Below, one piece after another: positions 1-33,745 of a stretch of DNA of 64,000 nucleotides (its first letter is position 1; each line of letters begins with the position of its first letter). The position numbers and the translations under genes are program-made. This DNA comes from Ranitomeya imitator (lineage: Eukaryota): contig NC_091283.1 of NCBI RefSeq assembly GCF_032444005.1, positions 782,440,001 to 782,504,000 of the forward strand, given 5' to 3'. Under the pieces are notes generated by a model. That model was not told where the DNA came from. It saw nothing but the letters and a program-made list of their open reading frames with translations, and ran no database searches.

Positions 1-2561
1 GAAACACAGTTTTCCATTCATCACCCTGCTTAATACGAACAAGATTATATGCCCCCCGAAAGCCAATCTTCGTAAACCAACTAGCCCCCTTAATCCTAGC
101 AAACAAATCGGTAAGCAAAGGTAAAGGGTATTGAAACTTGACCGTGATCTTATTCAAGAGGCGATAATCAATACAGGGTCTCAAGGAGATATCCTTCTTA
201 GCAACAACAAAAAAATCCCGCTCCCAACGGTGAAGAAGATGGCCGAATATGCCCTTTCTCCAAAGACTCCTTAACATAACTCCGCATAGCGGTATGTTCA
301 GGCACAGACAGATTGAAAAGTCAACCCTTAGGAAACTTACAGCCTGGAATCAAATCAATCGCACAATCGCAGTCCCTGTGCGGTGGAAGGGAACTGGACT
401 TGGGCTCATCGAATACATCCTGAAAATCAGACAAAAACTCTGGAATTTCAGAAGAGGAAGAAGAGGAGATTGACATCAAAGGAACATCATTATGAACCCC
501 CTGACAACCCCAACTAGTCACAGACATAGACTTCCAATCCAACACAGGATTATGTACCTGCAACCACGGAAAACCCAGCACGATAGCATCATGCAAATTA
601 TGCAACACCAGAAATCGACAATCTTCCTGATGGGCTGGTGCCATGCGCATGGTCACCTGTGTCCAAAACTGGGGCTTATTTTTAGCCAAGGGTGTAGCAT
701 CAATGCCCCTTAAAGGAATAGGGTTCTGCAAAGGCTGCAAGGGAAAACCACAATGCCTGGCAAACTCAAAGTCCATTAAGTTCAAGGCGGCACCTGAATC
801 CACAAACGCCATGACAGAAAATGATGACAATGAGCAGATCAAGGACACAGATAACAGAAATTTAGGTTGTACCGTACTGATGGTAAATGAACTAGCGATC
901 CTCTTTGTCCGCTTAGGGCAGACTGAAATGACATGAGAAGCGTCGTCACAATAATAACACAACCTATTCTTACATCTGAATCCTTGTCGTTCCGTTCTAG
1001 ACAGAATCCTATCACACTGCATTGGCTGTTGTGAATTCTGCTCTTGGGCTCCCTCCGGTAGTTATGAGTGGTAGTGCTGCTGTCTGTGGATCGCAGCATC
1101 TATCAGGTGTGTTAACTTTTGCAATTTAACTCAGCTATTTAGTCCTGCTTGATCCTTTAGTCAGTGCCAGTTGTCCATTTTTTTTGGAGGATTCAAATCC
1201 CTTTCTGGTCTCTCCTGTTTGCTGTGCTTTTCTTCAAAGATAAGTCCTGGCTTTGTTTCTGCTGTCCACATCCGGTGGGCCTTATAGTTCTGTGCATTTT
1301 CATGTATTATCTTGTCCAGCTTGTCTGTGAAAGGATTTTTTGCAGCCAAGCGGTATCTCTGGAGATGCAGATATATCCTCCATGTCTTTAGTCAGATGTG
1401 GAGTTTTGTATTTTCTGTGGTGGATATTTTCTAGTGTTTTAATACTGAACGCATAGTTCTCTGTACTATACTTTCTATTTAGCTAGTATGGCTTCCTCTG
1501 CTAAATTCTGATTTCAGTCTGCGTATGTCATTTTCCTCTCCTCTCACAGTCAATATTTGTGGGGGGCTGTCTTTCCTTTGGGGATTTTCTCTGAGGCAAG
1601 ATAGTTTTCCGTTTCTATCTTTAGGGGTATTTAGTCCTCAGGCTGTGTCGAGGTGTCTAGGGAGCGTTAGGTACATCCCACGGCTACATCTAGTTGTGTT
1701 GTTGAGTTCAGGGTCTGCGTTCAATACAGGTACCACCTTCTCCAGAGTACGTCTCATGCTGCTCCTAGGCCACCAGATTATAACAATTGGCTCAGGAATC
1801 TGCTCTGAGGACAACGCCACAGCGCGCACAGTTCTGCGCTCCCGCAAAGCGCGGGTCAATCTGAATGGCCAGAGACATAGAATCACTCAGACCGAAAGGC
1901 GTGGGAAACCCCACCATAATATCTTTAACGGATTCAGAAAGACCCTTTCTGAAAATTGCTGCCAAAGCATCATCATTCCATTTAGTCAACACAGACCATT
2001 TTCTAAATTTCTGACAATACAATTCTGCCGCCTCTTGACCCTGAGACAGGGCCAACAAGGTCTTCTTTGCTTGATCCACAGAATTCGGTTCATCATATAA
2101 TAATCCTAAAGCCTGAAAAAAGGAGTCTACATTAAGCAAAGCCGGATTCCCAGATTCCAGGGAAAATGCCCAATCCTGTGGATCACCACGCAGCAGGAAG
2201 ATGACGATTTTAACCTGCTGAATGAAATCACCAGAGGATCGAGGTCTCAGAGCAAAAAACAGTTTACAGTTGTTTTTAAAACTCAAAAATTTGGACCTGT
2301 CACCAAAAAACAAATCAGGAGTAGGAATCTTCGGCTCTAAAACAGGAGTCTGAACAATATAATCTGAAATACCCTGTACCCTAGCAGCAAGCTGGTCTAC
2401 ACGAGAAGCTAATTCCTGAACATCCATGCTAGCACAAGACTCCTCAGCCACCCAGAGAAAAAGAGGGAAGAGAAGATAAAGCAGACTGCAGAAAAAAAAT
2501 GGCCCAACACCTTTCTTCCCTTCTTCTGAGATGCATTTAACTCATTATTGGCCAGTTGTAC
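1..2561 (-). mobile_element. Ty3/Gypsy (Tf1/sushi, PEG10/RTL1-like) family 1 internal region: gag, protease, start of RT; continues beyond the window start
   Basis: ORF 1792-2451 is a Ty3 capsid gag (PDLFFGDRSKFLSFKNNC). ORF 321-1022 has a CYYC..H...C knuckle and protease motif AFVDSGA. It abuts the LTR at 2562 and is interrupted by a solo LTR at 1027-1785. Confidence 0.93.
1027..1785 (+). mobile_element. Family 1 solo LTR, inserted antisense into family 1 gag
   Basis: TGTTGTGAATTC...ATAACA ends; ATTGGC duplicated at 1021-1026 and 1786-1791; splits gag peptide EPM|QCDRIL. Confidence 0.93.
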
Positions 2562-3330
2562 TGTTATGATCCGGTGACCTTGGAGCTGCATGAAACTTTC
2601 TCTGGAGTAGGTGGTAACTGTACTGACCACAAATCCTGAACTAACACCGCTACTAGAAGTAGCCGTGGGATGTGCCTAACAAACCCTAGACACCTCGACA
2701 CAACCGGAGGACTAAATACCCCTATAGATGGAAATAGGAATTCTACCTTGCCTCAGAGCAGAACCCCAAAGGATAGGCAGCCCCCCATGAATATTGACTG
2801 TGAGTAGGAGAGGAAAGACACACGCAGGCAGAAAACAGGATTTAGCAAAAGAGGCTACTCTAGCTAGATAGGAAAGGATAGGACAGAATACTAAGCGGTC
2901 AGTATTAAAACCCTTCCAAAAATATCCACAGCAGATGATACAAAAAATTCCACCATCTAACTAAAGACATGGAACGTATATCTGCAACTCCTGAGAATCC
3001 AACTAGACTGAGAAAATGCTGACACAATCTAAGCTGGACAAGAAAAAACAAATGAATAGCACTGAATTATGAAGCACACAGCATGTGTGCCACAGAAACA
3101 AAACCAGACACTTATCTTTGCTGATTTGGCAGTAAGGCAGGAGGAACCAGACAGAGGTCCAACACCTCCAGCAACCATGGACAACTGGCAAGGACTAATG
3201 AATCCTGCACACCTAAATACCCCAGTCAGAACTGCAATCAGCAGATACACCTGACCAGGACTGCAACCCAGGGACAAATGCATTACCACCTACAACCACC
3301 GGAGGGAGCCCAAAAGCAGAATTCACAACA
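2562..3330 (-). mobile_element. Family 1 5' LTR
   Basis: Reverse complement of the same LTR family (TGTTATGATCC...GAATTCACAACA on +); primer-binding region at 2551-2561 lies next to it. Confidence 0.92.
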
Positions 3331-4542: not shown

Positions 4543-4869
4543 CTCATCCTTGTATTTTGGAGGGAGATGGCTGACCATGTGAAGGACACTTTGGCCACCA
4601 GGGAGATTCCCACCGCACTGGAGGAGCTGACTGTATCAACTCACATTGACCTCCGTTTTCACGAGCAGAGGTTAGAATGAGCCCAGTGTAGGCAGAGGTT
4701 TCAGCTGACTCCCAGATTTGCCAAACCTATAGGATCTCCGGTCCAGGCGGCCGAACCATATGAGAACGTTGAGATGTCATGAGCGGGGCCTAAGTCCCGG
4801 ACCTCTCGCACACTCAAGGTCTATCCGGTCTGCCAGCAGTTGGGACATTATGCCCGGAAATGTCCCCAG

Positions 4870-5645: not shown

Positions 5646-6701
5646 GTCCCCAGCTGTCAGGAAAACGTCAGCATCTAGTGGTAGTAGGAGAAAGTACACT
5701 AGACACGGTGACTTTTTACTCCAAATTGTCCTTCAAGGTGACAATTGCCTTATACCCATCCACACAAACGGTAGAGCTTTGCATGGATTCTGGGGCGGAG
5801 GGCAATTTCATGTCTTCTGCATTCGCCCAACGGCACGCAATATCCCTGGTGATGCTCGCCAATCCAGTGACCATACGAGTGGTGAATGGGTCAACACTGC
5901 CCTCACAGATAACACAACAGACCATCCCATTTACTCTTTCTATGTTGCCATCCCATTAGGAGATTATCTCTTTATTCCTGAGGGAATTGATGAGGTGCTA
6001 TTAGGGATACCTTGGCTATGGTACCACTCCCCTCATATAGAGTGGTCCACAGGCAGAATTTTGGGATGGAGTGTATCTTGTGAGGGTAGATGTCAGAGGG
6101 AGTGGGTTCAGGTTGCTACTACTGAGCTACCCGCAGATCTTTCCTCTCTCCCAAGTACTATTGGCCCTATGCAGGTGTGTTCTCCAAGAGGGCTGCGGAG
6201 ACTTTTCCGCCTCACCACCCCTATAACTGTCCTATTGACCTCTTGCCTGGTGCTGAGCCTCCCCGGGGTCGAGTCTAACGTTATCTCTCCCGGAGACGGA
6301 GGCAATGTCTCAGTACATCCTGGAGAATGTAGCAAGAGGATTCATTAGGAAGTCAGTGTCATCCGCAGGAGTTGGGTTCTTCTGCGTGCAGTAGAAGAAT
6401 GGAGAGCTTCATCCATGCAGACTACAGGGGTCTTAACGCCATCACCGTTAAGAAAAAGTACCCACTGCCCCTGATATTTGAGCTCTTTGATAGGCTTCGG
6501 GGAGCAAGGGTATTTACTAAACTTGATCTGCGGGGTGCTTAGAACCTGATTCGCATCCGTGAGGGGGACGAATGGAAGACGGCTTTTAACACCAGGGATG
6601 GGCACGATGAATACCTGGTAATGCCCCAGCCGTTTTCCAAGACTTTGTGAATGATATCTTCCGGGATATGCTCTCCACCTCGGTTGTATTCTATCTAGAT
6701 G

Positions 6702-6926
6702 GCTGGACCATCATTGTAAATACATCATTGTAAATACACACCTGTACTATGTAGTTCCCCACCTCATTGTAGATTGTTAGCTCTCACGAGCAGGGTCGTC
6801 TTGTGTTGCTTTAATTATTGTATTGTTAACATTGTTACTTATGACTGTTTTGTTTGAAGCTGTTAAACTGTAAAGCGCTGCGGAATATGTTGGCGCCATA
6901 TAAATAAAGATTATTATTATTATTAT
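6702..6926 (+). mobile_element. L2 LINE 3' end fragment inserted in the Gypsy RT
   Basis: L2-type tail GTAAAGCGCTGCGGAATATGTTGGCGCCATATAAATAAAG(ATT)n; TSD TATCT(A/G)GATG at 6692-6701 and 6927-6936. Confidence 0.82.
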
Positions 6927-9104: not shown

Positions 9105-10072
9105 TGTTAGGTGTTGAGTTCCCACCGCTGCACAAGGGGAATCTTGAACCATGTCCGCTGCAGTCTCCCATTCTTCTCCAGCTGCAGTGGAACCTGCTCA
9201 GCGGAGACATCAATCCCAGCGTCTGGCTCAAGCTGATACTGTGCAAATGGTTACTGCTGCTTTTCCAGGCTCTGCCTTTGTAGCCAGCACTGATCAGCAG
9301 CAAGCAGGCCTTTCTGGGACTAAGTCCTGCTTTTCCCATACTGAGCATGCCCACGGGATGACCTCCCTTTGGAGGTCGGGGGTCACATGCTCAGGTCCTG
9401 TTGCGGCTCCTATTGGACCATCAGGAAGGTCCTGGAGCGCTACTGCTATAAAAGATTTGCATGGCCACTCGGCCATGCACTAGTGTAAACTGATTTACTT
9501 GTGTGTGTGTAGATGAATGCCTGTTGATGGATGAAAGCCCTGAATCATTCCCATCTCTAGTGTTGCTGCCTGCTCACGAATGGTGGAAGCTACCTAGCGC
9601 TACTCTGCACATCCTGCACACAATTCTGCATCTCTCAGCAGCGACCGCCAGTGCGGCGCCATGCGCTTAGTGCGCTTTCCGGGCCCAGGTTAGGGTGGTT
9701 AGTGGCATCCACCAGAGCGGCGTTGTACGCACTCTTGTGCTATAAATTATTATTATTAGTTCAGTTCTACCCCTGACACCACAGTAACTGTGTCAAGCAT
9801 AAGAGGTCTAGAGGAACTCTTTCCCCGTGTCTTGGGACAGAGTTCTGTGACCCTTTACTTGTGCTCTCTGTGCGGTATTGAGGCCTTGTGACAGAACAGG
9901 GTTTGCTTCCTTCATACTGGGTGAAACTAACCCGTGTGTGTATTTACATTATACCCCCATCTAGTCCTCCATTACTGAGCAGCAGGTGTCCTTTCTGCAC
10001 GGTGGGCCCCGGACTGCGAAGGCACCTCATATCCTCTCTAAATATTATTTGGTGCACTCAACCAGTCTAACA
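9105..10072 (+). mobile_element. Family 2 copy A 3' LTR
   Basis: Follows the PPT; TGTTAGG...GTCTAACA; TATAAAA at about 9447; homologous to LTR 32093-32938 in U3 and at the 3' end. Confidence 0.85.
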
Positions 10073-16700: not shown

Positions 16701-17710
16701 TCATCCTTCTTCTCCGCTAGGTTTCTGAAACTTAACATGGACAAAACAGAATTCATCATCTTTCCCCCATCTCATGTGACCCCCCCCCAATGAACCTATC
16801 CATTACAGTGTCCAATAAAACAACATTACAGTAAATGGCTATCCACTCTCCCCAGTCCCACAAGCTCGCTGCCTCGGTGTAATCCTTGACGCTGATCTCT
16901 CCTTCAAACCACATATCCAAGCCCTTTCTACTTCCTGCTGACTTCAACTCAAAAATATTTCACAAATCCGTTCATTCCTCAACCAATAATCTGCAAAAAC
17001 CCTAGTCCATGCCCTCATCATCTCTCGCCTTGACTACTGCAACCTCCTGCTCTGTGGCCTCCCCTCGAACACTCTTGCACCCCTCCAATCTATTGTAAAC
17101 TCTGCTGCCCGACTAATCCACCTGTCCCCCGCTATTCCCCAGCTTCTCCCCTCTGTCAATCCCTTCACTGGCTCCCCATTGCCAAGAGACTCCAGTACAA
17201 AACCCTAACCATGACATACAAATCCATCCACAACCTGTCTCCTCCATACATCTGTGACCTCGTCTCCCGGTACTTTCCTGCATACAACCTCCGATCCTCA
17301 CAAGATCTCCTTCTCTATTCCCCTCTTATCTTCTCTTCCCACAATCGCATACAAGATTTCTCTCCCGCATCACCCCTACTCTGGAACTCTCTGCCACAAC
17401 ATATCAGACTCTCACCTATCATCGAAACCTTCAAAAAGAGCCTGAAGACCCACCTCTTCCGACAAGCCTATAACCTGCAGTAACCGTCGATCGACCAAAC
17501 TGCTGCATGACCAGCTCGACCCTCGCCTACTGTATTCTCACCCATCCCTTGTAGATTGTGAGCCTTCGTGGGCAGGGTCCCCTCTCCTCCTGTACCAGTT
17601 ATGACTTGTATTGTTTAAGATTATTGTACTTGTTTTTATTATGTACACCCCTCCTTACATGTAAAGCGCCATGGAATAAATGGCGCTATAACAATAAATA
17701 ATAATAATAA
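13790..17710 (+). mobile_element. L2 LINE, near full ORF2 (APE endonuclease and RT), frameshifted, with an internal deletion near 15720
   Basis: LAITETWL, IIMGDFN, LDLIFT (APE); [30 protein letters not shown] (RT); 3' stem-loop AGCGCCAT-GGAATAA-ATGGCGCT (17665-17687) and (AAT)n tail. Confidence 0.93.
13982..14793 (+). mobile_element. Family 1-related solo LTR inside the L2 ORF2 N-terminus
   Basis: TGTTGTGAATTC...CATAACA; TSD CCCCTC at 13976-13981 and 14794-14799. Confidence 0.92.
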
Positions 17711-18945
17711 CTGCCAAGTGCCTTGCCAGTAACAGTACCTCCATTTTGATGCCCCATAGTAACAGTATCCACAAAAAGTATAATATCCAATAGCAGTGAT
17801 CTCTAGCTTTGTGAATTTTTCACAGTTAAAATCTGTGGCCTTCATACAATATTAATGCAAATGTCCCCTTTGTAGCCCTAGTGCAATACTAAAATTCTTT
17901 TTTGTGCTCCCATATAGTAGTTATGTCTGTCTTAGTGCTCAAATACAAGTTTAATGCAACATTACCAGTGGCAACAATACACCATTTGCCCCATACCGAA
18001 ATACCATTCACCTTTTATGCCTTGTGGGAGGTAGTGACGGGTATTATATGCAAGGGACGCTATGTATCTCCCGGGATGTGCATAGAAGCATATTGAGGCT
18101 GCTGGTGTGCACTGCAGTCACAGGAATAGCTGCGGTTGCATTGCAGAATAAAAGTAAGTGTGGTTTTGGACGAGCTATTTGCCCAAGGCAGATTTAAGAA
18201 AACCTGGCATAAGCTTTTATTTTGATGTGAACTACAGGATAGTAGTGGGGGAGTATGCTCCCTCCTGGCCGAGTCTTACAAATGTCACAGATTCCATTTT
18301 GGTAGTAAATTGTTTGCGTGTGTCAGTGTTTTTTGCAAGCAGTAGAGCAGGTGGCTCCTCAACGTCCAGCTTGCGTGCAGTAACACAGAGCCAAGAGCAG
18401 TGAACACCTGATACACCGCAGCGTCATATGGTGGTGCAGTCACCTCGGCAACCAGTCTTGGATACGGACTGTTGTCAGGCTCCGGCTGCGATCTGGAGGA
18501 TACCGTGTGCTGTTCATTTTGTCAGTTGTTTGGACATTAAATATGTTTGGTGTGAACTTTCCTGGCCACTTCCTTACTACTGCACGGTGTGAACACCGCA
18601 GCACTGCAATTGCTTAGAAAATGCGGGCAGTGTGAATTGAGGCATGCCCCAACATCAGCTGCTTGTCTATGCCACACTACTGCAACCAAGACCTGCGGAC
18701 AAGATGGAGGAAATCCTGAGGCAGCTGGTCCTCCCACAACAACAACAGCAACAGACAAATAACCTGTTGCTGCAGCAAATTGCAGCCCTCTGTGAGACAC
18801 CTCCAGCACTGATCCTGGAATGTCGTGAGGCCCAGCACAAGGTACGCTCCACTTTGAGGAATATGAGTCAGTAAGATGACATGGAAGCTTTCTTCACATC
18901 TATGAGCGCACCGCAGAGCGGGAGAACCTCCCAACTTCCCAGCAG

Positions 18946-19323: not shown

Positions 19324-21851
19324 GGACTTTATACAGGACTCTGTATGCTGTCATGCCAGACCCTGCAAGCCTCAGAGCTGGGGGAAAGGGTTGCTTTTCT
19401 TGCTAATGACAGTCAGACCCGAGTCCATACTGATGGGGAGTGAGAATGGCAGGAGACAAGTTTCTCCCAAAGCGGTCTCAAAGACTAACAGTGCCTTGAT
19501 TATGAGGTGCTGACGATGCCAGGGACCCGGACATGTGGCTGCCAACTGCCATTTGATGACTCAACCCATGGACTGCAGGTTTATACACAGAGTTTCTATG
19601 TATGTCTAGTCAGTCTGCACCATATCTACAGGAACTGCATACAGTGAACCCTAACTGTGCCAGGTTTTTGGCAATGGATACCAGACAGAGGTTCTCCTGG
19701 ACTCAGGAAACTTAGTTACTCTGTTCCTTGGGTCACTAGTTGCCAGGGACAACCCCACCAGTTGGAAAGTGGGAGTGGTGTGTATGCATGGGGAATTCCG
19801 AAAGTGCCCGACTGAGGAGGTTACATTTTCCACTGCGTGTGGAGAAATAAAGCATGTGGTGAGAGTGCTAAAGACCCTTCCATCTGGGACTGTGTTGGGA
19901 AGAGACTTGCTCCTGTTCTGGTTCTGTGGGAGTACAGGGTTAACCCTCCCAGGGTAGAGGTTATTCTGGGCACTGAACCCAAAGATACCAAGTCAGGGAT
20001 ACCTGCTTAGGGTTTGCCAGCCTAGGGACAGAGTGTGACTCTGATAGGTTTCCCCTAGAGGTATTGGCAGGAGAAGTCGAGGAGACTCCATTGATCCCCA
20101 AACTAGAAGTGTCCCCTGGTACGTTTGGGACCACTCAGCTACAGGATCCCGCCCTGGCCCAGGGCACGAGAGAAGGTAGTGGAAATAAATGGGGTGGCTC
20201 AGCACCTGGGTGCAGAAATGTTTTTTCCCCGCATGGCTTTCAACCAAGAGTTATTGTATAGGATTGATAAAATCCAAGATGAAGTAGTAGAACAGCTGGT
20301 GGTGCCTCAGTCGTACCGTTGGGCCATGCTAGAGATGACACACACATGCTAGGAGGACACTTAGCTGTAAAGAAAACCCAAGGATGTTTACTGCAGTGGT
20401 TGTTTTGGCCCAGGGTGTATGCGGAAGTACAACGGTATTGTGAGTCATGTCCTGAGTGCCAACTGTCCACACCCATTGCAAGTCCATTTGTGTCTCTACC
20501 CAACATAGCAATACCCTTTGAGCAAATAGCAGTGGATGTGGTGGCCCCTATAGTGAAATCCACCTGTGGCCATCAACATATTCTGGTCATAGTGGATTGT
20601 GCCATGTGGTACCCAGAGGCGATTTCACTTCGCCATACCTAGGCAAAAGTAATCACCCGAGAGTTGTTTGCAATGTTTTGTCTCCTTGGGCTACCAAAGG
20701 AGACTATTACCGATCAGGGGACTCCTTTTATGTTCTAAGTGACCAGGGAGCTATGTAAGCTGCTGCAGATTAAACAGCTATGCATTTCCGTGTACCACCC
20801 ACAAACTGACGGGTTGGTTGAGAGGTTTAATAAGACCCTCAAGCCTATGCTCAAAAAGGTGGTCTCCAAGAACGGGAGAGATTGGGACATGTTATTGCCA
20901 TACATAATGTTCGCCATCCATGAGGTACCACAGGCGTCCACGGGCTTCTTACCTTTTGAGCTATTGCATTGCAGGCATCTAAGGGGGTTGCTGGATGTAG
21001 CCAAGGAGACATGGGAGCAGAACCAACTCCACATCGATGTGTAATAGATCACGTGGCAAGCATGCAGGACAGGATTGCAGCAGAGCCACACGTATAATTA
21101 AAGAGCCACTGTCAAGACCTTTAAAGAAGGGGAACGAGTGTGCCCTAGTGCCCACCACAGAGACTGAACTCATGGCCAAGTGGCAAGGGCCATAGAGATA
21201 CAGGGGAAGGTGGGAGAAGTGAATTCCAGAGTGTACCAGCCCGGAAAGAGAAAACCCAAACAACTGTACCTTGTAAACCTGTTAAAAACCTGGAATGACC
21301 AGAAATGTTTGATCACAGAGGCGACTCCAGTCGTACAAATAGGGAACCCTCTGTCACTGGCCAAGGACGTGGCAGGGGGTGAGGTTAAGATAAATGATAG
21401 TCTCACAAAACAGCAGCGACGGGAGGCTCGGTTATTGGTGCAACAGAATATGGACGTATTGTCAGAACTGCCAGGTCGGACCTCGGTGATCCAGCATGAT
21501 ATAGTCACTGAGCTCCGGATAAGGATACAGATAAAACCAGACTCAGTGCCAGAAGCCCGGAGGTAAGCCATCATGAAGCAGATGCTTCAGTTGGGAATCA
21601 TAGAGGAATCCCTAAGTGAAATGGCTAGCCCTATTGTACTGATTCCAAAGTCAGATGGGTCATTACGATTCTGTAACGACTTTAGGAAGTTGAAAGAAGG
21701 GTCAAAGTTTGACCTTTATCCATTGCCCCAGGTGGATGAGCTAACTTAGAGACTGGGGAAGGTCCAGTACTTCACCATGCTCAAGCTCACCAAATGTTGC
21801 TGGCCGGTACCACTGACAGAATAGGCAAAATAAAAGACCGCCTTTATCACA

Positions 21852-22521
21852 ACCCCTTTCCACTTCCTGCCGACATCAACTCAAAAATATTTCATGGATC
21901 CGTACATTCTTCAACCATGAATCTGCAAAAACTCTAGTCCATGTCCTCATCATCTTCCACCATGACTATTGCAACCTCCTCCTGCTCTGTGGCCGCCCCT
22001 CTAACACTCTCGTACACCTCCAATCTATTCTAAACTCTGCTGCCCGACTAATCCACCTGTCCCCCGCTATTCATTGACCTCTCCCCTCTGTCAATCCTAG
22101 CACTGGCTCCCCATTTCCCAAAGACTCCAGTTAAAAACCCTAACCATGGCATACAAAGTCATCCACAAGCTTTGCCCTCCTTACATCTGTGACCTTGTCT
22201 CCCAGTACTTACCTGCACGCAACCTCTGATCCTCACAAGACCTCCTTCTCTACTCCCCTCTTTTCTCCCCAAAATCGCATGCAAGATTTCTCCCACGCAT
22301 CACCCCTACTTTGGAACACTCTACCACATCATACCCTCGCCTACTCTATCCTCACCCATCCCTTGTAGATTGTGAGCCCTTGCGGGCAGGGTCTTCACTT
22401 CTCCTGTACCAGTTGTGACTTGTATTGTTTAAGATTACTGTACTTGTTTTTATTATGTATACCCCTCTTCACATGAAAAAGCGCCATGTAATAAATGGCG
22501 CTATCTTAATAGATAATAATA
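21852..22521 (+). mobile_element. 5'-truncated L2 fragment in the Gmr1 RT
   Basis: Homologous to 16925-17710; (AAT) tail; TSD ATCACA at 21846-21851 and 22522-22527; RT resumes TPEGLYHY. Confidence 0.88.
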
Positions 22522-22588
22522 ATCACACCAGAAGGTCTCTATCACTATGTAGTCTTGTCTTTGGATTACATGGGGCTCCAGCAACATT

Positions 22589-23466: not shown

Positions 23467-25275
23467 TTCATATTATAAACTCAATTTGACTAAATCCACA
23501 ATTTTTCCCCTTTTTCTCCCAACCCCCCTTCAAATCCAAATTCAATCTCAATATGCGTTCATTTGGGCTCCCCTGGGTTTTACGTACCTAGGTATCAGGA
23601 TAACTAGGTTAGACAATATAGTTCGTGCAAATTGTGAGGAAACCCTTGCGGAGGTCAGGAAGGGCATGGATCACTTATCGAGTGCCTCGCTCTCATGGAT
23701 GGCCCGCATACAAACCGCTAAAATGCTATTCCTACCTAAAATTATGTACCTTTTCCGGTGCCTCCCCCTTTTTATCCCCTCGAAATGTATTTTAGCTTTT
23801 CAGTCGCTTATAGATCGGTTTATTTGGAATAAGAAACCTCACAGGATCAGGCGTCGGATTATGTCTCTACCGTATTCTGTGGGTGGGCTAGGCGCTCCTG
23901 CGGTGCAGTCTTACTATAGAGCGGCGATCCTTGAGCCCCTTAAAATATGGTGGGAGGGGAACTCATGTTTGCCCTGGTTTATTATCGAATCTCACTTTGC
24001 CCCCAAAAATTCGCTTAAATTGCTCTTAGAGCTTCAGCTGCTTCGGGTTCCTCTTGTGGGCCCTTGTCTCCGTTCTATCAGGAATGCTTCTAAACTTTGG
24101 GCGCTGCTTAGCTCCTCTCATCTGGTGTTTATGTATGATTATGTATCTTTGCAGGCTTTGGAGTATGCTATCGGGCACATTTCTCTTTCCTCCTGGAGAG
24201 GTCGCGGGGTGCTCCGGGTGGCTGACCTATTCGGCTCAGATGGCCTTCTGTCGTTTGAGGACCTTTCAGGGAGATTCTTCCTTACTAATACTGACTTTTT
24301 CCAATACCTTCAGCTCCGTAGCTTCCTCAGGTCACGTCGGTCGTTCGGGGCACCCCCGCCTTTGACAGAAGACCCGGCTCATAGGTTCTTCAGACGAGCC
24401 ACTATATTGCCCCATGGCATCTCCATTATCTATAAAGCCCTCATATCTTATGGTACTACTGACAGGTTTCCGTTTATGACTTCCTGGGAGTCCTCGCTGG
24501 GTTTTGAGGCCTCCCTGGAAGATTGGCAGTTTGCAATGGTACATCCCTCCAAGTTCTCCTCATGTCTTGGCCACTTGGAACAGGTGAAAAAGATTCAGCT
24601 GCATTGGTATCTTACCCCTGTCCACTTGGCGAAGTTCTCCCCGTCTTCCTCTCCTCTTTGCTGGAAGGGGTGTGGCGCCATGGGGTCCTCCTCCCATGTC
24701 TGGTTGGCATTCCCCGAGGTTCAGGCTTTTTGGCGCTGGGTGGAGGCATTGATTGCTGATCTGACTCGTCTCCCCCTTGCGCTGAGTGGTCAGCTCGCTG
24801 TCCTGGGCATTTCCCTTATTGATCTCCCCTCTCCGGCCCATAGTCTCTAATGTCCTAGTTGCTGCCAGACAATGTATTGCGAAGTACTGGAAGTCCCCGG
24901 ATCTCCCTTCCAGAGCTGAACTGATCTCCAAAATTGATCTACACTTCTGCTATGAGGTTATTATGGCTCAGGGTTTATCAAGGAAAACTAAGGTCCTCTC
25001 ATGGTGGGACCCCTGGGTATCCTCGACCTACATCTCTCAGTCTGCTCTTACCCTCATTTAAATGCATGCTTCTTTGACTTTTTGTTGTATCTGGCACTGT
25101 GATTGTGTATTTTATATTTTGTACTGATTATGCTGTGGTCTTCAAGTATTATGTACTGGGTTTTTCCCTTTGTCCCCCTTCCCTCCCCTATTTCCCTTCT
25201 CTCCCTTCCTTTTTCTGAAGTTTTCTGATGTGTTGTTTGACATGCAATATCTCAATAAAAATTTATTGGTTAAAA
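23467..25275 (+). mobile_element. 5'-truncated L1-clade LINE (ORF2 C-terminus, 3' UTR, polyA)
   Basis: ORF 23426-24850 YKLNLTKS, YLGIRIT, KMLFLPKIMYLF, GGLGAP, CWKGCG..H zinc-knuckle relic; AATAAA and polyA; 13-bp TSD AAAATAATTTCCC (23454-23466, 25276-25288). Confidence 0.92.
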
Positions 25276-25589
25276 AAAATAATTTCCCCTGCCCTGTAAT
25301 GTCCCTCATCCTGGGCCCCTTTCTGTAATAATGTCACCTTCCTAGATCGTAACTGTAGAAGAAATGAGTGCACATAGGGTCTTATCCGATGGAAAAATAA
25401 GCGATCTACTAAAATTGCACTAACCTGATAGATCTAAGGTAATGACATATAGAGAATTTGAGAATATCAGCTGCAGCAGATGTGCGGGTCCGTAGGTGAC
25501 CACATCAAATGTGAAGAGATAGAACATTTGTTGATGTAATCCGCACTGCTGATTAAAAGGCAGGACCAAAGATATCCAAATGAAGGAAA

Positions 25590-25650
25590 GTGTTTTTTAT
25601 TTCAACGCATTTTGAAGTTCAAGTGACTTGTTCCTCAGGAACATAACCAC
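25590..25650 (-). ncRNA. Degenerate type I hammerhead ribozyme motif
   Basis: Minus strand GTGGTTATGTTC-CTGAGGA-ACAAGT...ACTTC-AAAATGCGTT-GAAA; GAAA and ACGCGT altered by CpG-type changes. Confidence 0.6.
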
Positions 25651-27799
25651 ATATATACAGGAACAGGTAAAAATGGCTATACAAATAGAAAAAAAATTCA
25701 AATCTGGCGCCAATAAAAATCACATGACAAATGGTGTCAGGGTTCATAGTATTTACATATGGTATAACACATGATCTGTATATAAATTTAATATAAACAA
25801 AATAAATAGAATTCACATTGGTATTCCCATGAATAGGCAATAATACAATATATATATTGTTTCACAGATGTGTGAAAAAAGAAGGAAAAAAGACGAAAGA
25901 AAAAAATTAAAAAATTAAAGGCTCGGTTGAAAACTCACACCAAACAATAGGTGATGACACCCTCAGCCATCACCCTACGGATGTGCCACAACTACAGACA
26001 CAAGAGGAAAAAGGAGAAATACCATTACCACCTTCCGATATTCAGTGTATCAAAATAAATTTTTGAAAAAATTAAAACATACTGTATATATGTTTATTGA
26101 AAAAATAAAAAATATTAAAAATGTAATAAAAATATTGAGTCTACTGTAATGTAAAGAAATTTTGTTTTAGTATGTCACATTGATAAATGTTAAAAAAGAA
26201 AAAAAAATGTTTTATTTATTATAAAACCTGCTGAGTTGAAAAAGATTTATAAAATTATTTCAAAACGATTAATAAAACATTTCAATGAAAAAGCTTCTTT
26301 CTTATGTTGTGTATATTACCTTTCAATTTTATCGGGTAGCAATGAGCCGCAAACCTATGTGCACACAGCTATTGTACAGATAGTAATTTAGTTATGATTA
26401 AAGTAGCTACCCTGAAATCAGAGTAGCTCACCTGGAGTTAATGCAAATTAAGGAGAAAAGAATGATTATCACAAGTGGTTAAAAGTAAGAAGACCTGCGG
26501 CTTCTAATTTCGATGAGGAGCACTGTATCTATTTCTTTGGGGCTCCTCATCGATATTAGAAGCCACAGGTCTTCTTACTTTTAACTACTTGTGATCTAAG
26601 AAAGAAGCTTTTTTCATTGGAATGTTTTATTAATCGTTTTTAATTAATTTTACAAATCTTTTTTAACTTATCAGTTTTTATAATAAAATATTTTTTTCTT
26701 TTTTAACATGTAACATTGTGATATGCTTACATTTTTTTTACAATACAGTACAATCAATATTTTTATTACATTTTTAATATTTTTTATTTTTTCGATAAAC
26801 ATATATATGTTTTAATGTTTTCAAAAACTTATTTTGATACTCTAAATATCCGTAGGTGGTAATGTCATTTCTCCTATTTCGTTGTTTATGGAGTTGTGGC
26901 ACATCAGTAGTGTGACAGCTGAGGGTATCATCACCTATTGTTTGATCTTTTGGTGCGAGTTCTCAATCGAGCCTTTCGTTTTTTTATTTTTTTTTTAATT
27001 CTTTTTTCCTTCTTCCTTTTTAATATATCAGTGAAACAATATATTTTATTATTGCCTAATCATGTGAATACCTTTTAGGGGTCGAGTTCCCGCCTCTGCA
27101 CAGGGGGAATCTCGGGCCATCTTCGCTGCGGTCTCCCATTCTTCTCCTCCCGCAGTGGAGATGTCGATCCCAGTGTCTCGCTCAGTCTTACTCTGTGCAA
27201 AGGGTTACTGCTGTTTTTCCAGCTTCTGCCATTGAAGCCAGTGCTGGGCAGCGGCGAGCAGACGCTTTTTGGGACTAAGTCCAGCTTTTTCCCTTCTGAC
27301 CCTGCCCAGGGTAAGATCTCTCATTGGAGATCGAGGGTCACATGCTTAGATACTGCAGCAAAACCCATTGGTTATGTGCTTTGCGCCAGTGTGGTTACGT
27401 TTGTATGTGTTCAGGGACCCGGCTGAAATAAGCCCCTAGAATACCGGCACCCCAGTGAGGAGATTGTGTGTATGGATTCAAGGCCCCACATGAAATAAGC
27501 CCCTAGAATACTGGCTCCTCTGGTGAGGAGATTGCATGTTTGCGTAACCACCAACTGCTATCTGCTCGGCAGTCTCTGTGTACTCTTGTGAGGTTAACAG
27601 GGCACAGTGCTTTCTTTAGGTGACTCTGTAAAGTAACAGAGTTCGCTTATACCGCCATATAGGGCCGCCATTTGCCAGCAGCAGGTTCTCTCCTGCACGG
27701 TGGACCCCGGGCTGTAAATGCACCAAATAATATCTCTCTATTTACTCGGTGCGTTCCGCCAGCCCTAACAGAATATTAGCACCAGGGTCTGGCTAGTAA

Positions 27800-28886
27800 A
27801 TGGTGGATGATCAGCGTTTACAGCGGTACATCCAGCAGCTGGAGGGTAGGTTGGTGGCTCTTGAGCGCACAACCTCAGCTGTGGATGTTACCGCAGTCAC
27901 TGTTCAGGCTGCAAGTGTAGCTGCAGCCAGTTTGTCCTCTGCCACCCATGCTCTTACTTTATCCCATCTCCCGCTTCCAGACAAGTTTGCTGGTGACAGT
28001 AAGCTATGTCGGGGATTCGTGAGTCAGTGCTCCATACATCTAGAGCTCCTGGCTGCACGTTTTCCTACGGAACGGGTGAAAGTGGGATTTATTTTATCCC
28101 TTTTATCGGGCAGGGCGTTGGAGTGGGCAATGCCTCTATGGGAGCGTAATGATCGTGTGGTGCAGAGTGCTCCTCTCTTCCTGGACGCTCTGAAACAGGT
28201 TTTTTTGGGACCTCGTGTCACCCACGATATCGCGCTCCACCTGTTGGCAATAACACAGGGTTTGTCCATGGTCAGCCAGTTCACCGTCCAATTCCGGACT
28301 CTGGTCTCTGAGTTGGAGTGGCCGGAAAAAGTCCTTATTCCGGTGTACTGGAAAGGACTGGCAGACCATGTGAAGGACGCCTTGGCCACCAGGGAGATTC
28401 CCGCCACACTGGAGGAGCTCATTTCTATATCTACCCACATCGACTTCCACTTTAATGAGTGGAGGTTAGAGCGGACACAATGTAGTCAGAGGTTTCAGCT
28501 GGCTCCCACCTTCGCCAGACCTCTAGAATCTTCCGTTCAGGCGTCCGACTCCCATGAGGCCATGGAGGTTTCTCGAGCGGGACCTAAGTCTCGGACCGCT
28601 CGAGTACCCGTGGTTTGTAGAAATTGCCAATTACAAGTACATTATGCAAATAAATGTCCACGGCGGTCAGGTAAACGATCGCGTCTAGTAACCATTGGAG
28701 GAGGTTCACTAGACACAGCGGCGTTTTCCTCCAAGCTGTCCTTCAAAGGGACAATCATGTTAGACTCATCCTCTCTAACAGTCGAGCTATGTGTGGATTC
28801 TGGAGCAGAGATGAATTTCATGTCCCCTGCTTTTGCTCTGCGCCATGCAATACCTCTGGTGATGCTCGCCAAACCAGTGACTGTTA
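27800..28886 (+). pseudogene. gag (Ty3 capsid, CCHC) fused in frame to the protease N-terminus
   Basis: PDKFAGDSKLCRGF; CRNCQLQVHYANKC; LCVDSGAEMNF; the ORF is ended by the MITE inserted at 28887. Confidence 0.88.
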
Positions 28887-29081
28887 GGCTGCCATCACAC
28901 AAGCAGTATTTGGTCAGTATTTTACCTCAGTATTTGTAAGCCAAAATCAGGAGTGGAACAATTAGAGGAAAAGTATAATAGAAACATATGTACCACTTCT
29001 GCATTTATCACCCACTCCTGGTTTTGGCTTACAAATAGTGATGTAAAATACTGACCAAATACTGCTAGTGTGACGGCAGCC
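28887..29081. mobile_element. PIF/Harbinger-type MITE
   Basis: TIRs GGCTGCC(A/G)TCACAC; TTA target duplication; almost fully palindromic. Confidence 0.85.
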
Positions 29082-32000
29082 TTAGAGTTGTGAATGGGTC
29101 GACACTTCCTTCACAAATCACACACCAGACTGTCCCTTTTACATTATCCATGTCCCCTTCCCACCAGGAGATTATTTCCCTTCTTGTCCTTCCCGAGGGA
29201 ATGGACGAGATTCTGCTGGGAATACCCTGGCTCCGTTTTCACTCCCCACATATTGAGTGAACCTCTGGGAGGATATTGGGTTGGAGTGAATCATGTAAGG
29301 GCAGATGTGTGAGAGAGTGCGTTCAGGTTTCCACCACCGAGATACCCACAGATCTTTCTTCCCTTCCCAAATGCTATTGGTCCTATGCAGACGTCTTCTC
29401 CAAAAAGGCTGCGGAGACCCTTCCGCTTCACCATCCCTATAACTGTCCTATTGATCTCTTGCCTGGAGCAAAACCTCCTCGGGGATGGGTCTATCCCCTC
29501 TCTCTCCCGGAAACAGACGCTATGTCCCAATACATCCAGTAAAATTTGGCAAGAGTGTTCATTAGGAAGTCACTGTCACCTGCAGGTGTGGGGTTCTTCT
29601 TCGTGCAGAAGAAGAATGGAGAATTACATCCTTGCATAGATTACAGGGGTCTTAACGTCATCACAGTTAAAAATAAGTACCCGCTGCCCCTGATTTCTGA
29701 GCTCTTTGATACGTGAAGCAAGGGTATTTACCAAATTAGATCTGCGGGGTGCTTATAACCTGATTCGCATCCGTGAGGGGGATGAATGGAAGACAGCCTT
29801 TAATACCAGGGATGGGCACTATGAGTATCTGGTGATGCCCTTCGGGCTCTGTAATGCTCCAGCCGTTTTCCAAGACTTTGTCAGTGACATCTTCCAGGAT
29901 ATGCTCTCCACCTCGGTCGTAGTCTATCTGGATGATATTCTCATCTTCTCTCCAGATATTGACTCCCACCGGAGAGATGTTTACAGAGTCTTCGACCTCT
30001 TACGGCAAATTCCCTCTATGCAAAGTTGGAGAAGTGTATGTTTGAGCAGGAGTCTTTACCTTTCCTGGGCTATATCATCTCCGCCCAGGGATTGACTATG
30101 GATCCTGCCAAACTACAGGCTGTGATGGACTGGCAAGAACCCCATTCTCTTAAAGCAGTGCAGTGCTTTATGGGGTTCACTAACCACTATTGCCAGTTCA
30201 TTCCCCACTTCTCAACTTTGGTAGCTCCCTTGGTAGTCCTCACCAAGAAGGGAGCAAATCCCAAATTGTAGTCTGAAGAGGTCTCCAGGGCCTTCTCTTC
30301 TATTACATCTCATTTTGCTAGCGCTCCCATCCTACATCATCCCGATGTTGATAAGCCATTTATAATGGAGGTGGATGCCTCATCCGTTGGTGCAGGAGCA
30401 GTCCTCTTCCAAAAGGATGCTCAAGGTCGGAAGAATCCTTGCTTCTTCTTCTCCAAGACTTTCACACCAGCGGAGAGGAATTATTCCATCGGAGACAGGG
30501 AGTTGCTAGCAATGAAGTTGGCTTTCTCGGAGTGGAGACATCTTTTGTAAGGGTCTCGCTTTCCCTTTCAAGTCTTCACGGACCACAAAAATTTGGTATA
30601 TTTATAAACAGCCCAGCGGCTAAATTCTCTTCATTCCAGATGGTCCTTGTTCTTCTCCTGGTTCCACTTCACCCTCCTTTATCTTGCTGGGGAGAAGAAC
30701 ATTCGTGCTGATGCCCTCTCTCGCTCCGTTGTGTCATCTGAGGAGGTGGAAGGGGAGCCTCAGCTTATTGTCCATACTGAGAGCCTGAGAACCGTAACTC
30801 CGGTTTCGCTAGAGTCTGTGCCTCCGGGCAAGACTTTTGTACCCATTAATTTGCAACCTGAGGTTCTCTCTTGGGCTCATTCATCCAGGGTGGGTGGACA
30901 CTTTGGGACAAGGAGGACATCTGAGCTGCTGGTGAGGACGTACTGGTGGCTACATATGGTCTGTGACATTGGAGATTATATTCAGGTGTGTGTCTCCTGT
31001 GCCAAAAATAAGTCTCCTCGACAACGGCCAGCTGGGTTACTCTATCCCTTGCTGGTGGCAGACAGGCCCTGGGATGGTCGGGATGGACTTTGTGGTGGGT
31101 TTGCCCAAATCTTGTGGCTGTACCATCATTTGGGTTATCACCAATCATTTTTCTAAAATGGTGCATTTGGTGCCGCTTCCACTGCTACCTTCTGCACGGG
31201 CCTTGGCAGTGTTGTTCATAAAACACATCTTCTGCCTGCACGGTATGCCGGACAAAATTGTCAGTGACCGGGGTCCCCAGTTTGCGTCTCGGTTCTGGAG
31301 AGAGCTTTGTCATCTACTCAGCATTGAGTTAAATCTCTCTTTCGCATATCATTCCGAGACGAATGGCTTGGTAGAAAGGGCAAACCAGACCTTGGTCACA
31401 TATCTGCAACATTTTGTCTCAGCCAGGCAGGATGACTGGGCATCCTTGCTATCGTGGGCGGAGTTTGCACTGAACAACGCTGTAGCTGACTCCACTAGAC
31501 AAACCCCATTCCTCCTTAACTATGGTCAGCATCCGCGGGTACCTGTGCCTATGCCAGTGTCTTCCGCCAACTCCAGGGTGGCAGACTGGGCTGTGGAGGT
31601 ACGGGATACTTGGGACCACACTCAGGATGCCATTCGGGCCTCCAAGGAGGCACCCGCTCCGACTTTTGCTCCTGGCGACTTGGTGTGGCTCTCCGCCTGT
31701 AACATCAGGCTGCGAGTTGAGTCCTCTAAGTTTGCACCTCGCTACTTGGGCCCTTTCAAGGTCCTCGAACAGGTTAACCCTATGATCTACCATTTAGCCC
31801 TTCCGCCACGCCTGGGTATCACCGACTCCTTTCATGTGTCCCTCTTGAAACACGTATACATGTCCCGGTTTTCCGAGTCATTTGCCGGGACATCGGGTTC
31901 ATCTACGGACGATTACGAGGTGAACGCTATTTTGGGGTACAAGGTGGTACATGGCAAAAAATTTTATTTGGTGGAATTGAAGGGTTATGGTCCTGAGGAC

Positions 32001-33109
32001 AGGTCCTGGGAGCCTGCTTAGAACATTCAGGCACCGTAGCTCATTGCTGCCTTCGAGCGTAGAGAGGTCCAGGGGGGGCTGTGGGGGGGTGATGTTAGGG
32101 GTTGAGTTCCCACCTCTGCACAGGGGGAATCTCGGGCCATCTCCGCTGTGGTCTCCCATTCTTCTCCTGCCGCAGTGGAGCCTGCTCAGCGGAGACGTCG
32201 ATCCCAGCATCTCGCTCAGTCTGACTCTGTGCAAAGGGTTACTGCTGCTTTTCCAGCTTCTGCCATTGAAGCCAGTGCTGGGCAGCAGCGAGCAGACACT
32301 TTTGGGACTAAGTCCTGCTTTTTCCCTTCTGAGCATGCCCAGGATGAGATCTCTCATTGGAGATCGAGGGTCAAATGCTTAGATACTGCAGCAAAATCCA
32401 TTGGTTCTCCAGGAACGTCCTGAAGTTCCTCAGGCTCTGTGGCAGCCTCTCATTGGTCCTTCTAGGAAGGTCCTGTACTTGCAGCAGCTATAAAAGGTTC
32501 ACATGGCCGCATGGCCATGCGCTAGTATCAAATCTAAGTTATGTGCTTTGCGCCAGTGTGGTTACGTTTGTATGTGTTCAGGGACCTGGCTGAAATAAGC
32601 CCCTAGAATACTGGCACCTCCGGTGAGGAGATTGTGTGTATGGATTCAGGGCCCCAGCTGAAATAAGCCCCTAGAATATCGGCTCCTCTGGTAAGGAGGT
32701 TGTATGTTTGCGTAACCACCAACTGCTATCTGTTCGGCAGTCTCTGTGTACTCCTGTGAGGTTAACAGGACACAGTGCTTTCTTTAGGCGACTCTGTGCA
32801 GTAACAGAGTTCACTTCTACCGCCATATAGGGCTGCCATTTGCCAGCAGCAGGTTCTCACCTGCATGGTGGACCCTGGGATGCGAACGCACCAAATAACA
32901 TCTCTCTATTTAATCGGTGCGTTCCGCAAGCCCTAACAATACCAATGTGAATTATATTTATTTTGTTTATATTCAATTTATATACAGATCATATGTTATA
33001 TCATATGTAAATACTATGAACCCTGACACCATCTGTCATGTGATTTTTTTTGGCGCCAGATTTGAAAATGTTTTCTATTTGTATAGACATTTCTACCTGT
33101 TCTTGTATA

Positions 33110-33172
33110 TATGTGGTTGTGTTCCTGAGGAAGAAGTCACTTGAACTTTGAAACGCGTTGAAGTACAAACCA
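33110..33172 (+). ncRNA. Type I minimal hammerhead ribozyme motif (Penelope-like)
   Basis: CTGAGGA 33125-33131; stem II GAAGT/ACTTT; GAAA 33150-33153; palindromic helix III ACGCGT; helix I GTGGTT..TTC pairs with GAA..AACCAC. Confidence 0.72.
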
Positions 33173-33419
33173 CTTTCTTTCATTGGGATATCTTTGGTCC
33201 TGCATTTTAATCGGCAGTGCGGATTACATCCACCAACCTTCTACCTCTTCGAAATGTCAACTTCCTGGGACTTTTCCGGCAATTATTATATATGCACCCT
33301 CCATCCTAGTATATATGGCCGTAATCCTGGCTCCATGCTGGTATATATATTGCCCTATCCTGATATATATATGTCCTCTGTTCTACCACTGTTCTTTAAT
33401 GTTTAGAAGAAAATAAACC

Positions 33420-33745
33420 ATTATACTCACCAGGGGCGTACATAGAAGTCATGGGGTTCCATTGAAGAAGTATCATGCACCCCCCATAATTCTTCTACAG
33501 TATAATGCATCCCATGGTCTTCCTTATAATGCACATCTCATAATCATCCATAAAGTAAAATGCACACCATAGTCATCCAAAAAGTATAATGCACCCCCAT
33601 AGTGCTCCTGCTCCATAGTAGTATAATGCACCCCTATAGTCATCCTATAAACTATAATGCACCCGCTATAGTCATCCATAAAGTATAATGCACCCCACAG
33701 TCCTCCTATAAAGTGTAATGCACCCCCATAATCATCCATAAAGTT
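33420..33745. repeat. Degenerate minisatellite (ATAAAGTATAATGCACCCC-like units)
   Basis: Repeated TATAATGCACCCC units of about 30-35 bp. Confidence 0.75.

What the first reader, a model, noticed from the sequence alone, without database searches (positions are those of the whole stretch)
27771..32529. Family 2 also shows a self-priming signature, with a different sequence
Seen: the PBS GAATATTAGCAC (27771-27782) pairs with GCGCTAGTAT (32519-32528) at 9 of 10 positions (one G-U wobble; the mismatch fits CpG decay). That sequence starts exactly 30 nt after TATAAAA (32489). LTR 9105 has GCACTAGTGT at the same offset from its TATA. Two families with unrelated primer sequences but identical geometry amount to natural covariation supporting tRNA-independent priming.
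Basis: partly seen in the sequence, partly recalled or inferred. Interest (0 to 1): 0.7.

Follow-up and report, generated by a model that had tools for sequence, protein, structure and literature searches.

The report
Self-priming frog chromovirus, decayed copy
A dead copy of a frog jumping gene has, where a tRNA primer site would normally sit, a short stretch that pairs with the predicted start of its own RNA; this self-priming is already known for this group, so the find is an ordinary new example.

Summary
Ten bases two positions after the 5' LTR (27773-27782) pair with 32519-32528 in the 3' LTR: 8 Watson-Crick pairs, 1 G-U and 1 mismatch. That stretch starts exactly 30 nt after the first T of TATAAAA (32489). 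The sister LTR at 9105 has a similar 10-mer at the same offset (9447 to 9477).

The element (27073-32938, target duplication ATACC) is a decayed Ty3/gypsy chromovirus. It has a sushi/RTL-type gag and an integrase chromodomain. This is the Tf1/sushi type, for which self-priming is published as a common feature, vertebrates included.

"Family 1" in the same window has the same geometry (TATA+30, LTR+3) with 9 perfect pairs, and its natural RNA folds that way with probability near 1.

Family 2 alone is weaker:
- Chance is about 1e-4 (fixed geometry) to 1.5e-3 (relaxed) by pair count, but 0.03 by duplex energy.
- The present sequence prefers other folds.
- The 5' LTR has lost about 134 nt that include the TATA box and the primer.
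- The sister element's primer-binding site lies outside the window, so true covariation could not be tested.
- No other copies could be obtained.

The scan has already noted and followed up this mechanism elsewhere in this genome. Verdict: real, and a new member of a known kind.

The parts
27068..27072 (+). Target-site duplication ATACC, left copy
   Evidence: Same 5-mer at 32939-32943. It occurs once in the unfilled target in the other arm of the inverted duplication (25820-25825, minus)..
27073..27770 (+). 5' LTR of Family 2 (698 nt), ending CCCTAACA. It carries a private deletion of about 134 nt between 27373 and 27374 that removes the TATA box and the predicted primer.
   Evidence: Self-BLAST: 27075-27373 matches 32095-32406 and 27371-27770 matches 32538-32938, 89-92% identity, with a 3-nt GTT overlap at the junction. 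Contigs from other copies run on past 27360 into TATA-region-like sequence (tables 5 and 7).
27771..27772 (+). 2-nt spacer (GA) between the LTR and the primer-binding site
   Evidence: Sequence. Family 1 has a 2-nt spacer (GT) at the same place.
27773..27782 (+). Primer-binding site (self-primer type), ATATTAGCAC
   Evidence: Pairs at 9 of 10 positions (8 WC + 1 GU) with 32519-32528. No TGG within 19 nt of the LTR end, so it is not a tRNA 3'-end site. It is unpaired, in a loop closed by U5:leader stems, in the fold of the natural 27640-27840 RNA (z = -2.0).
27785..27804 (+). Leader stretch just after the PBS that pairs with U5 (27702-27707 and 27667-27679), bracketing the PBS
   Evidence: MFE and centroid of the natural U5+leader. 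The same pairing forms with the 3' LTR copy of U5 (32870-32878, 32835-32847) in the two-strand fold.
27800..28884 (+). gag (and the start of protease), open frame
   Evidence: ORF 27800-28939. Pfam DUF4939 1e-11, Ty3_capsid 2.6e-9, Retrotrans_gag 5e-7, weak RVP_2. Closest proteins are unnamed products of Ranitomeya imitator, 70% identity.
28885..29084 (.). Insertion of about 200 nt of a very abundant short repeat, breaking gag/protease
   Evidence: Many contigs of other copies skip 28881/28885 to 29082/29085, and depth in 28893-29069 is several-fold above its neighbours. The sister element aligns 5871|5877 to 28881|29085.
29712..30008 (+). Reverse transcriptase fragment (frame broken around it)
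   Evidence: Pfam RVT_1 1.7e-21 on ORF 29706-30092.
30365..30547 (+). RNase H fragment
   Evidence: Pfam RT_RNaseH_2 1e-19 and RT_RNaseH 3e-18.
30839..32018 (+). Integrase: H2C2 zinc domain, catalytic core, SH3_Tf2-1 domain and C-terminal chromodomain (31914-32018)
   Evidence: Pfam Integrase_H2C2 1e-16, rve 4e-7, SH3_Tf2-1 4.5e-19, Chromo 2.4e-5 (24.6 bits, cut-off 25.1). Chromodomain motif is readable in the translation and in the sister element.
32071..32092 (+). Polypurine tract, G-rich, abutting the 3' LTR
   Evidence: Sequence.
32093..32938 (+). 3' LTR of Family 2 (846 nt), TGTTAGGG...CCCTAACA
   Evidence: It has an 8-nt terminal inverted repeat.
32489..32495 (+). TATA box (TATAAAA)
   Evidence: Sequence. 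Conserved in the sister LTR at 9447-9453.
32502..32519 (+). Perfect 7-bp inverted repeat with a 4-nt loop between the TATA box and the predicted start. Its last G is the first base of the primer.
   Evidence: Sequence. The same arms with a different loop occur in the sister LTR at 9460-9477. Function unknown.
32519..32528 (+). Predicted self-primer, the first 10 nt of the transcript (GCGCTAGTAT)
   Evidence: Starts 30 nt after the first T of the TATA box. Best complement of the PBS in the LTR. Decoy tests. The start site is predicted, not mapped.
32939..32943 (+). Target-site duplication ATACC, right copy
9105..10072 (+). 3' LTR of the sister element (internal part 3331-9104, about 80% identical to Family 2). 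TATA at 9447, primer-like 10-mer at 9477-9486. Its R/U5 middle is unlike Family 2 but its last 100 nt or so are alike.
   Evidence: The element's own 5' LTR and PBS are not in the window.
2551..3330 (-). Family 1 comparison case: 5' LTR 3330 to 2562, TATTTAG at 3219, primer 3189-3181, spacer GT, PBS 2559-2551
   Evidence: Nine perfect Watson-Crick pairs, with the primer 30 nt after the TATA-like box. In the natural 660-nt RNA the MFE pairs nt 1-9 with the PBS, P = 0.92-1.00. The primer is kept in two other LTR copies amid 20% divergence. gag and protease lie downstream on the minus strand.

Best explanation
Family 2 is a decayed LTR retrotransposon of a poison-frog genome. It belongs to the chromodomain-bearing Ty3/gypsy elements of the Tf1/sushi type. 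Its active progenitor most likely started reverse transcription without a tRNA.

Proposed steps, all inferred rather than shown:
1. Transcription begins about 30 nt after the TATA box of the 5' LTR.
2. The first 10 or so nucleotides of the RNA fold back over about 420 nt of R-U5 and pair with the 10-nt site two bases after the LTR.
3. The element's RNase H cuts behind the paired stretch.
4. The freed 3' end primes minus-strand DNA.
5. Because plus-strand synthesis copies the primer back into the new PBS, the two sites match perfectly at insertion and drift apart afterwards.

Shown here: element anatomy, domain content, the complementarity and its position, and the same geometry in a second family.

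This particular copy is dead. It has broken pol frames, a 200-nt insertion in gag/protease, and a 5' LTR that has lost its TATA box and primer.
For: Anatomy and family:
- TG..CA LTRs with a 5-bp TSD confirmed by an empty site.
- gag with DUF4939/Ty3_capsid, then RT, RNase H, and integrase with SH3_Tf2-1 and a chromodomain.

Complementarity:
- 8 WC + 1 GU of 10 at exactly TATA+30 versus LTR+3, the best 10-mer in the LTR.
- Decoy rate 1.2e-4 with fixed geometry and 1.5e-3 with 25 geometries.
- No TGG within 19 nt after the LTR.
- At both imperfect positions the primer base (C32520, G32525) is the same in the sister LTR. This fits decay on the PBS side, and A27781 is the CpG-to-CpA type of change.

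Context:
- The PBS lies unpaired in a loop closed by U5:leader stems.
- Family 1 in the same window has identical geometry with 9 perfect pairs, folding probability near 1 and a conserved primer.
- Literature: self-priming is a common feature of Tf1/sushi elements, with the primer at the RNA's 5' end and the start site at the primer's first base (10.1101/2022.12.06.519325; PMC4600332; PMC6317226).
Against: - The duplex is weak (-8.1 kcal/mol) and the energy-based decoy p is only 0.03. The Family 2 start region pairs about as well with Family 1's PBS.
- In two-strand folds of the present sequences the primer prefers a local hairpin (32543-32553) or U5 (27743-27752). Enforcing the claimed duplex costs +7.4 kcal/mol.
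- The transcription start is only predicted.
- Primer and PBS are never seen together in one LTR-leader unit, because of the 5' LTR deletion.
- No second copy with both sites could be obtained. The reads table gave no rows at either site.
- The chromodomain hit is just under Pfam's cut-off.
- Placement in the Tf1/sushi clade rests on domains, not on a tree.
Confidence: 0.75

Rival explanations
1. The complementarity in Family 2 is a chance match. The element is primed by something else, such as a tRNA fragment or another small RNA that pairs with the post-LTR stretch.
For: - A 9/10 match including G-U is expected about 0.8 times per LTR of this length.
- Energy-based decoy p is only 0.03, and a foreign PBS pairs equally well with the start region.
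- Folding does not select the duplex.
Against: - The match sits at exactly the position and register seen in Family 1. The fixed-geometry decoy rate is 1.2e-4.
- There is no TGG for a tRNA CCA end within 19 nt of the LTR.
- The element's clade is documented as self-priming (10.1101/2022.12.06.519325; PMC6317226).
Confidence: 0.15
2. The PBS pairs with a different part of the element's own RNA. The candidate is the GCTAGTA repeat of the primer core in the leader (27793-27799), which gives a local hairpin that sequesters the PBS or itself primes.
For: Seven pairs (one G-U) between 27774-27780 and 27793-27799. This is the MFE of the isolated 48-nt stretch and appears in a two-strand fold.
Against: - The hairpin is no better than shuffles (z = -0.39, 67 of 200 shuffles as good).
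- It disappears in the longer natural context, where the leader pairs with U5 instead.
- Family 1 has no such leader repeat.
- Priming from a site downstream of the PBS would cut the genome in two.
Confidence: 0.05

Closest known systems
Tf1 and Tf2 of Schizosaccharomyces pombe (also Tj1, Tosmo1-3, Tcry1): self-primed chromoviruses
   Same: - Ty3/gypsy order of genes and an integrase chromodomain.
- No tRNA-type PBS.
- A PBS just after the 5' LTR that is complementary to the first bases of the RNA.
- A start site placed by the TATA box at the primer's first base.
- PBS-adjacent sequence that pairs with LTR sequence downstream of the primer (10.1101/2022.12.06.519325; PMC4600332).
   Different: - The host is a frog.
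- The duplex is 10 nt (9 in Family 1), against 11 nt for Tf1 by my recollection of Levin's papers.
- About 420 nt (Family 2) or 630 nt (Family 1) lie between primer and PBS.
- The full three-duplex 'pretzel' was not demonstrated here.
- Nothing was tested experimentally.
Vertebrate Tf1/sushi group (sushi-ichi of pufferfish and relatives; Butler et al. 2001, J Mol Evol 52:260, cited in PMC4600332 and PMC6317226; paper itself not held)
   Same: Vertebrate chromoviruses whose gag is of the type that gave rise to the mammalian PEG10/RTL genes. The DUF4939 hit supports this. Self-priming has been proposed for them on the same sequence grounds.
   Different: This is a family of a poison-frog genome. 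Its nearest proteins in the databases are unnamed Ranitomeya imitator products. I could not check whether this exact family has been described.
Ty3 and other tRNA-primed Ty3/gypsy elements and retroviruses
   Same: LTR structure, PPT, a U5:leader stem bracketing the PBS, and the overall reverse-transcription scheme.
   Different: Those have a PBS that begins with TGG and is complementary to a tRNA 3' end. Here the first TGG is 20 nt after the LTR.

Membership tests
Chromovirus of the Tf1/sushi group (Ty3/gypsy, Metaviridae) | LTR retrotransposon with TG...CA LTRs, a short target duplication and a PPT | tested here: met
   3' LTR reads TGTTAGGG...CCCTAACA. The 5-bp TSD ATACC is confirmed by an empty site. 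A G-rich PPT lies at 32071-32092.
Chromovirus of the Tf1/sushi group (Ty3/gypsy, Metaviridae) | Gene order gag-PR-RT-RNase H-IN | tested here: met
   Pfam hits lie in that order along 27800-32018, on broken frames.
Chromovirus of the Tf1/sushi group (Ty3/gypsy, Metaviridae) | Chromodomain at the C-terminus of integrase | tested here: met
   Pfam Chromo E = 2.4e-5, 24.6 bits against a cut-off of 25.1, truncated by a stop. The motif is readable.
Chromovirus of the Tf1/sushi group (Ty3/gypsy, Metaviridae) | RT/IN phylogeny inside the Tf1/sushi clade | not tested
   No reference sequences were at hand. The only hints are the gag DUF4939 (RTL/sushi-type) and SH3_Tf2-1 domains.
Tf1-type self-priming | No tRNA-complementary PBS next to the 5' LTR | tested here: met
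   No TGG within 19 nt after the LTR end. Comparison with frog tRNA sequences was not possible, and the window holds no tRNA genes.
Tf1-type self-priming | PBS just after the 5' LTR complementary to the first 9-11 nt of the element's RNA | tested here: met
   8 WC + 1 GU of 10 between 27773-27782 and 32519-32528, with decoy rates 1.2e-4 to 1.5e-3. The match is imperfect and energetically weak.
Tf1-type self-priming | Transcription starts at the first base of the primer | not testable with these tools
   It is only predicted from TATA+30.
Tf1-type self-priming | Three-duplex 'pretzel' structure around the primer:PBS duplex | tested here: inconclusive
   U5:leader duplexes bracket an unpaired PBS. 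However, the central duplex is not chosen by folding of the decayed sequences (ddG +7.4). In Family 1 the central duplex forms, plus one 9-bp U5:R duplex.
Tf1-type self-priming | RNase H cut behind the primer; RNA primer attached to minus-strand strong-stop DNA | not testable with these tools
   This needs experiments.
Tf1-type self-priming | Compensatory change of primer and PBS between related copies | not testable with these tools
   The sister element's 5' end is outside the window.

The most novel reading that the evidence does not exclude
Family 2 may regulate its own priming. The perfect 7-bp palindrome that ends on the primer's first base (32502-32519, kept with a different loop in the sister LTR) and the repeat of the primer core in the leader (27793-27799) could be parts of a switch. 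Such a switch would decide where transcription starts, or whether the PBS is free. That layer has not been described for self-priming elements.
Probability: 0.07. Interest if true: 0.5.

Novelty: new member of a known kind. Interest (0 to 1): 0.2.

Why it matters
It adds a frog family to the list of vertebrate chromoviruses that appear to prime reverse transcription with the 5' end of their own RNA. It also shows that the TATA+30 / LTR+3 rule can be used to annotate such elements in this genome. It does not open a new question, because the mechanism was shown in Tf1 and has been proposed for vertebrate relatives since 2001. Its main practical value is for annotation. These elements lack a tRNA-type PBS, so LTR-finding tools that demand one will miss or misjudge them.

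Tried and rejected
Searches for other copies:
- Reads. Only Logan contigs were on offer. Laying four frog runs on 27300-32600 showed a very abundant family, but the variant table is cut to 40 of 1345 rows and has none at the PBS or the primer. It says nothing about those sites.
- Scans of metagenome, viral and genome contigs with gag, and of metagenome contigs with an LTR-end/leader pattern, found nothing.
- The search of earlier findings by sequence was blank.

In-window checks that led nowhere:
- A third 'LTR pair' (16914-17711 / 21845-22526) would have been an independent test. It is the repeated 3' end of a non-LTR-like repeat with an AAT-rich tail, not an LTR element.
- The leader hairpin as a PBS partner is not better than shuffles.
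- Rfam gave no family at gathering score in 25000-33600.
- The window holds no tRNA genes.

Steps deliberately not done:
I folded the two natural pieces as two strands instead. This adds an initiation penalty and may understate the duplex.
- I built no consensus of the element or of its PBS.

Papers: Butler et al. 2001 and Lin & Levin 1997 (RNA) are not held.
Full report
**What is at the coordinates**

Self-comparison of the window shows direct repeats 27075-27770 and 32095-32938 at 89-92% identity. The exact ends follow from the flanks. The element sits in one arm of a local inverted duplication, and the other arm (25790-25860, minus strand) keeps the unfilled target. The target 5-mer ATACC occurs once there and twice around the element, at 27068-27072 and 32939-32943. 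The LTRs are therefore 27073-27770 and 32093-32938. The 3' LTR reads TGTTAGGG...CCCTAACA, and a G-rich polypurine tract lies at 32071-32092.

**What kind of element it is**

Pfam scans of the open pieces gave the following:
- gag with DUF4939, Ty3_capsid and Retrotrans_gag
- a weak protease hit
- RVT_1
- RT_RNaseH
- Integrase_H2C2, rve and SH3_Tf2-1
- a C-terminal chromodomain at 24.6 bits, just under the 25.1 cut-off; the motif is readable

The pol frames are broken. About 200 nt of a very abundant short repeat interrupt gag/protease at 28885-29084. The closest proteins in the large database are three unnamed products of Ranitomeya imitator at 70% identity. Earlier notes of this scan also call the genome a poison-frog-like one. 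So this is a decayed chromovirus with a sushi/RTL-type gag. I did not make a tree, so its place inside the Tf1/sushi clade rests on domain content only.

**The observation**

It is correct in every stated detail:
- Bases 27773-27782 pair antiparallel with 32519-32528. There are eight Watson-Crick pairs, one G-U (32525/27776) and one C-A mismatch (32520/27781).
- This is the best 10-mer complement in the whole 3' LTR.
- TATAAAA starts at 32489 and the 10-mer starts at 32519.
- In the LTR beginning at 9105, TATAAAA starts at 9447 and the related 10-mer starts at 9477.
- At both imperfect positions the primer-side base is the same in the sister LTR. This fits change on the PBS side, and A27781 is of the CpG-to-CpA type. 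That is an inference from two sequences, not a reconstruction.

**Is it more than chance?**

A 9-of-10 match with G-U allowed is expected about 0.8 times somewhere in an 846-nt LTR, so the match alone means nothing. The position carries the weight.
- With 60,000 decoy post-LTR strings from the window, 7 reach the observed quality at the fixed geometry (primer at TATA+30, site at LTR+3).
- 88 reach it when five starts and five offsets are allowed. The rates are 1.2e-4 and 1.5e-3.
- By duplex energy the case is weaker: -8.9 kcal/mol with decoy p = 0.03. Family 1's PBS pairs with the Family 2 start region just as well.

**The second family**

- 5' LTR runs 3330 to 2562.
- gag (2451-1792) and protease (1022-321) follow on the minus strand.
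- Its LTR ends in ...ATAACA.
- After a 2-nt spacer, nine bases (2559-2551) are perfectly complementary to 3189-3181.
- That primer starts exactly 30 nt after the T of TATTTAG at 3219.

The natural, uninterrupted 660-nt RNA from that start folds with nucleotides 1-9 paired to the site across 630 nt, at probabilities of 0.92-1.00. The 9-mer and the TATA-like box are kept in two other LTR copies that differ by about 20% elsewhere.

So the same geometry at both ends (TATA+30 and LTR+3) recurs with an unrelated sequence. That is good support for a shared design. It is not covariation in the strict sense.

**Limits for Family 2**

- The 5' LTR of this copy lacks about 134 nt, equivalent to 32407-32540, with a 3-nt GTT overlap at the junction. 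The missing stretch contains the TATA box and the primer. Contigs from other copies continue through this point (tables 5 and 7), so the deletion is private to this copy.
- The sister element (3331-10072) is cut at 3330/3331 by the Family 1 element, and its 5' LTR and PBS are outside the window. The only possible compensatory test is therefore unavailable.
- Folding of the present sequences does not select the claimed duplex. The primer prefers U5 (27743-27752) or a local hairpin (32543-32553), and enforcing the duplex costs 7.4 kcal/mol. They are therefore somewhat biased against the duplex, and the sequences are decayed.
- On the supportive side, the natural U5+leader RNA (27640-27840) folds with the PBS unpaired in a loop closed by U5:leader stems (z = -2.0). 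This is the kind of PBS-adjacent pairing described for Tf1.

**Comparison with what is known**

[quoted passage not shown] It describes the primer at the RNA's 5' end, the PBS downstream of the 5' LTR and two further duplexes (the 'pretzel'). It places the transcription start at the 5' end of the self-primer.
- PMC4600332 says the mechanism has been implicated from fungi to vertebrates.
- PMC6317226 says self-primers were described in the Tf1/Sushi group from yeast and vertebrates, citing Butler et al. 2001.
- The scan's own notebook holds 45 notes on self-priming and PBS in this genome. One follow-up (s1-288117) reached the same verdict on other DNA.

**Verdict**

The most likely mechanism is Tf1-type self-priming in the progenitor of this dead copy (about 0.75). 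The main rival is a chance match with an unknown primer (about 0.15). It is a new member of a known kind, and interest is low.

**Tools and steps not used**

Noticed in passing
window 32502-32519 and 9460-9477: A perfect 7-bp inverted repeat (CATGGCC / GGCCATG) with a 4-nt loop lies between the TATA box and the predicted start. Its last G is the first primer base. The arms are identical in the two sister LTRs while the loops differ (GCAT vs ACTC). It could be a promoter element. Its function is unknown.
   Followed up: partly
window 27373/27374 (5' LTR) versus 32407-32540 (3' LTR): The 5' LTR has lost about 134 nt at a 3-nt GTT microhomology, which removes the TATA box and the primer. Contigs of other copies run through this point.
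   Followed up: yes
window 28885-29084: An insertion of about 200 nt of an extremely abundant short repeat lies inside gag/protease. Loose ends on its two sides read as reverse complements of each other, as for a small inverted-repeat element. Many other copies of the family lack it.
   Followed up: partly
window 25513-27072 and 32938-33250: The element sits in one arm of an inverted duplication (25513-25825 vs 33250-32938 at 91%; 25820-26304 vs 27072-26597 at 82%). This gave the empty-site proof of the TSD.
   Followed up: partly
window 1027-1785, 2562-3330, 3803-4542: There are three full Family 1 LTR copies at 77-81% identity: one minus-sense and two plus-sense. The plus-sense copy at 1027-1785 lies between gag and protease of the minus-strand Family 1 element. 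The one at 3803-4542 interrupts gag of the sister element only 470 nt from the Family 1 5' LTR. This is nested insertion or rearrangement, and it is not resolved.
   Followed up: partly
window 27793-27799: The leader repeats the core of the primer (GCTAGTA) 11 nt after the PBS and can pair with the PBS in a small hairpin. It is not better than shuffled sequence and is lost in the longer fold.
   Followed up: yes
window 16914-17711, 21845-22526, 45214-46859 (minus): Three copies of a repeat of about 800 nt end in an AAT-rich tail. They look like 3' ends of a non-LTR retroelement, not LTRs.
   Followed up: partly
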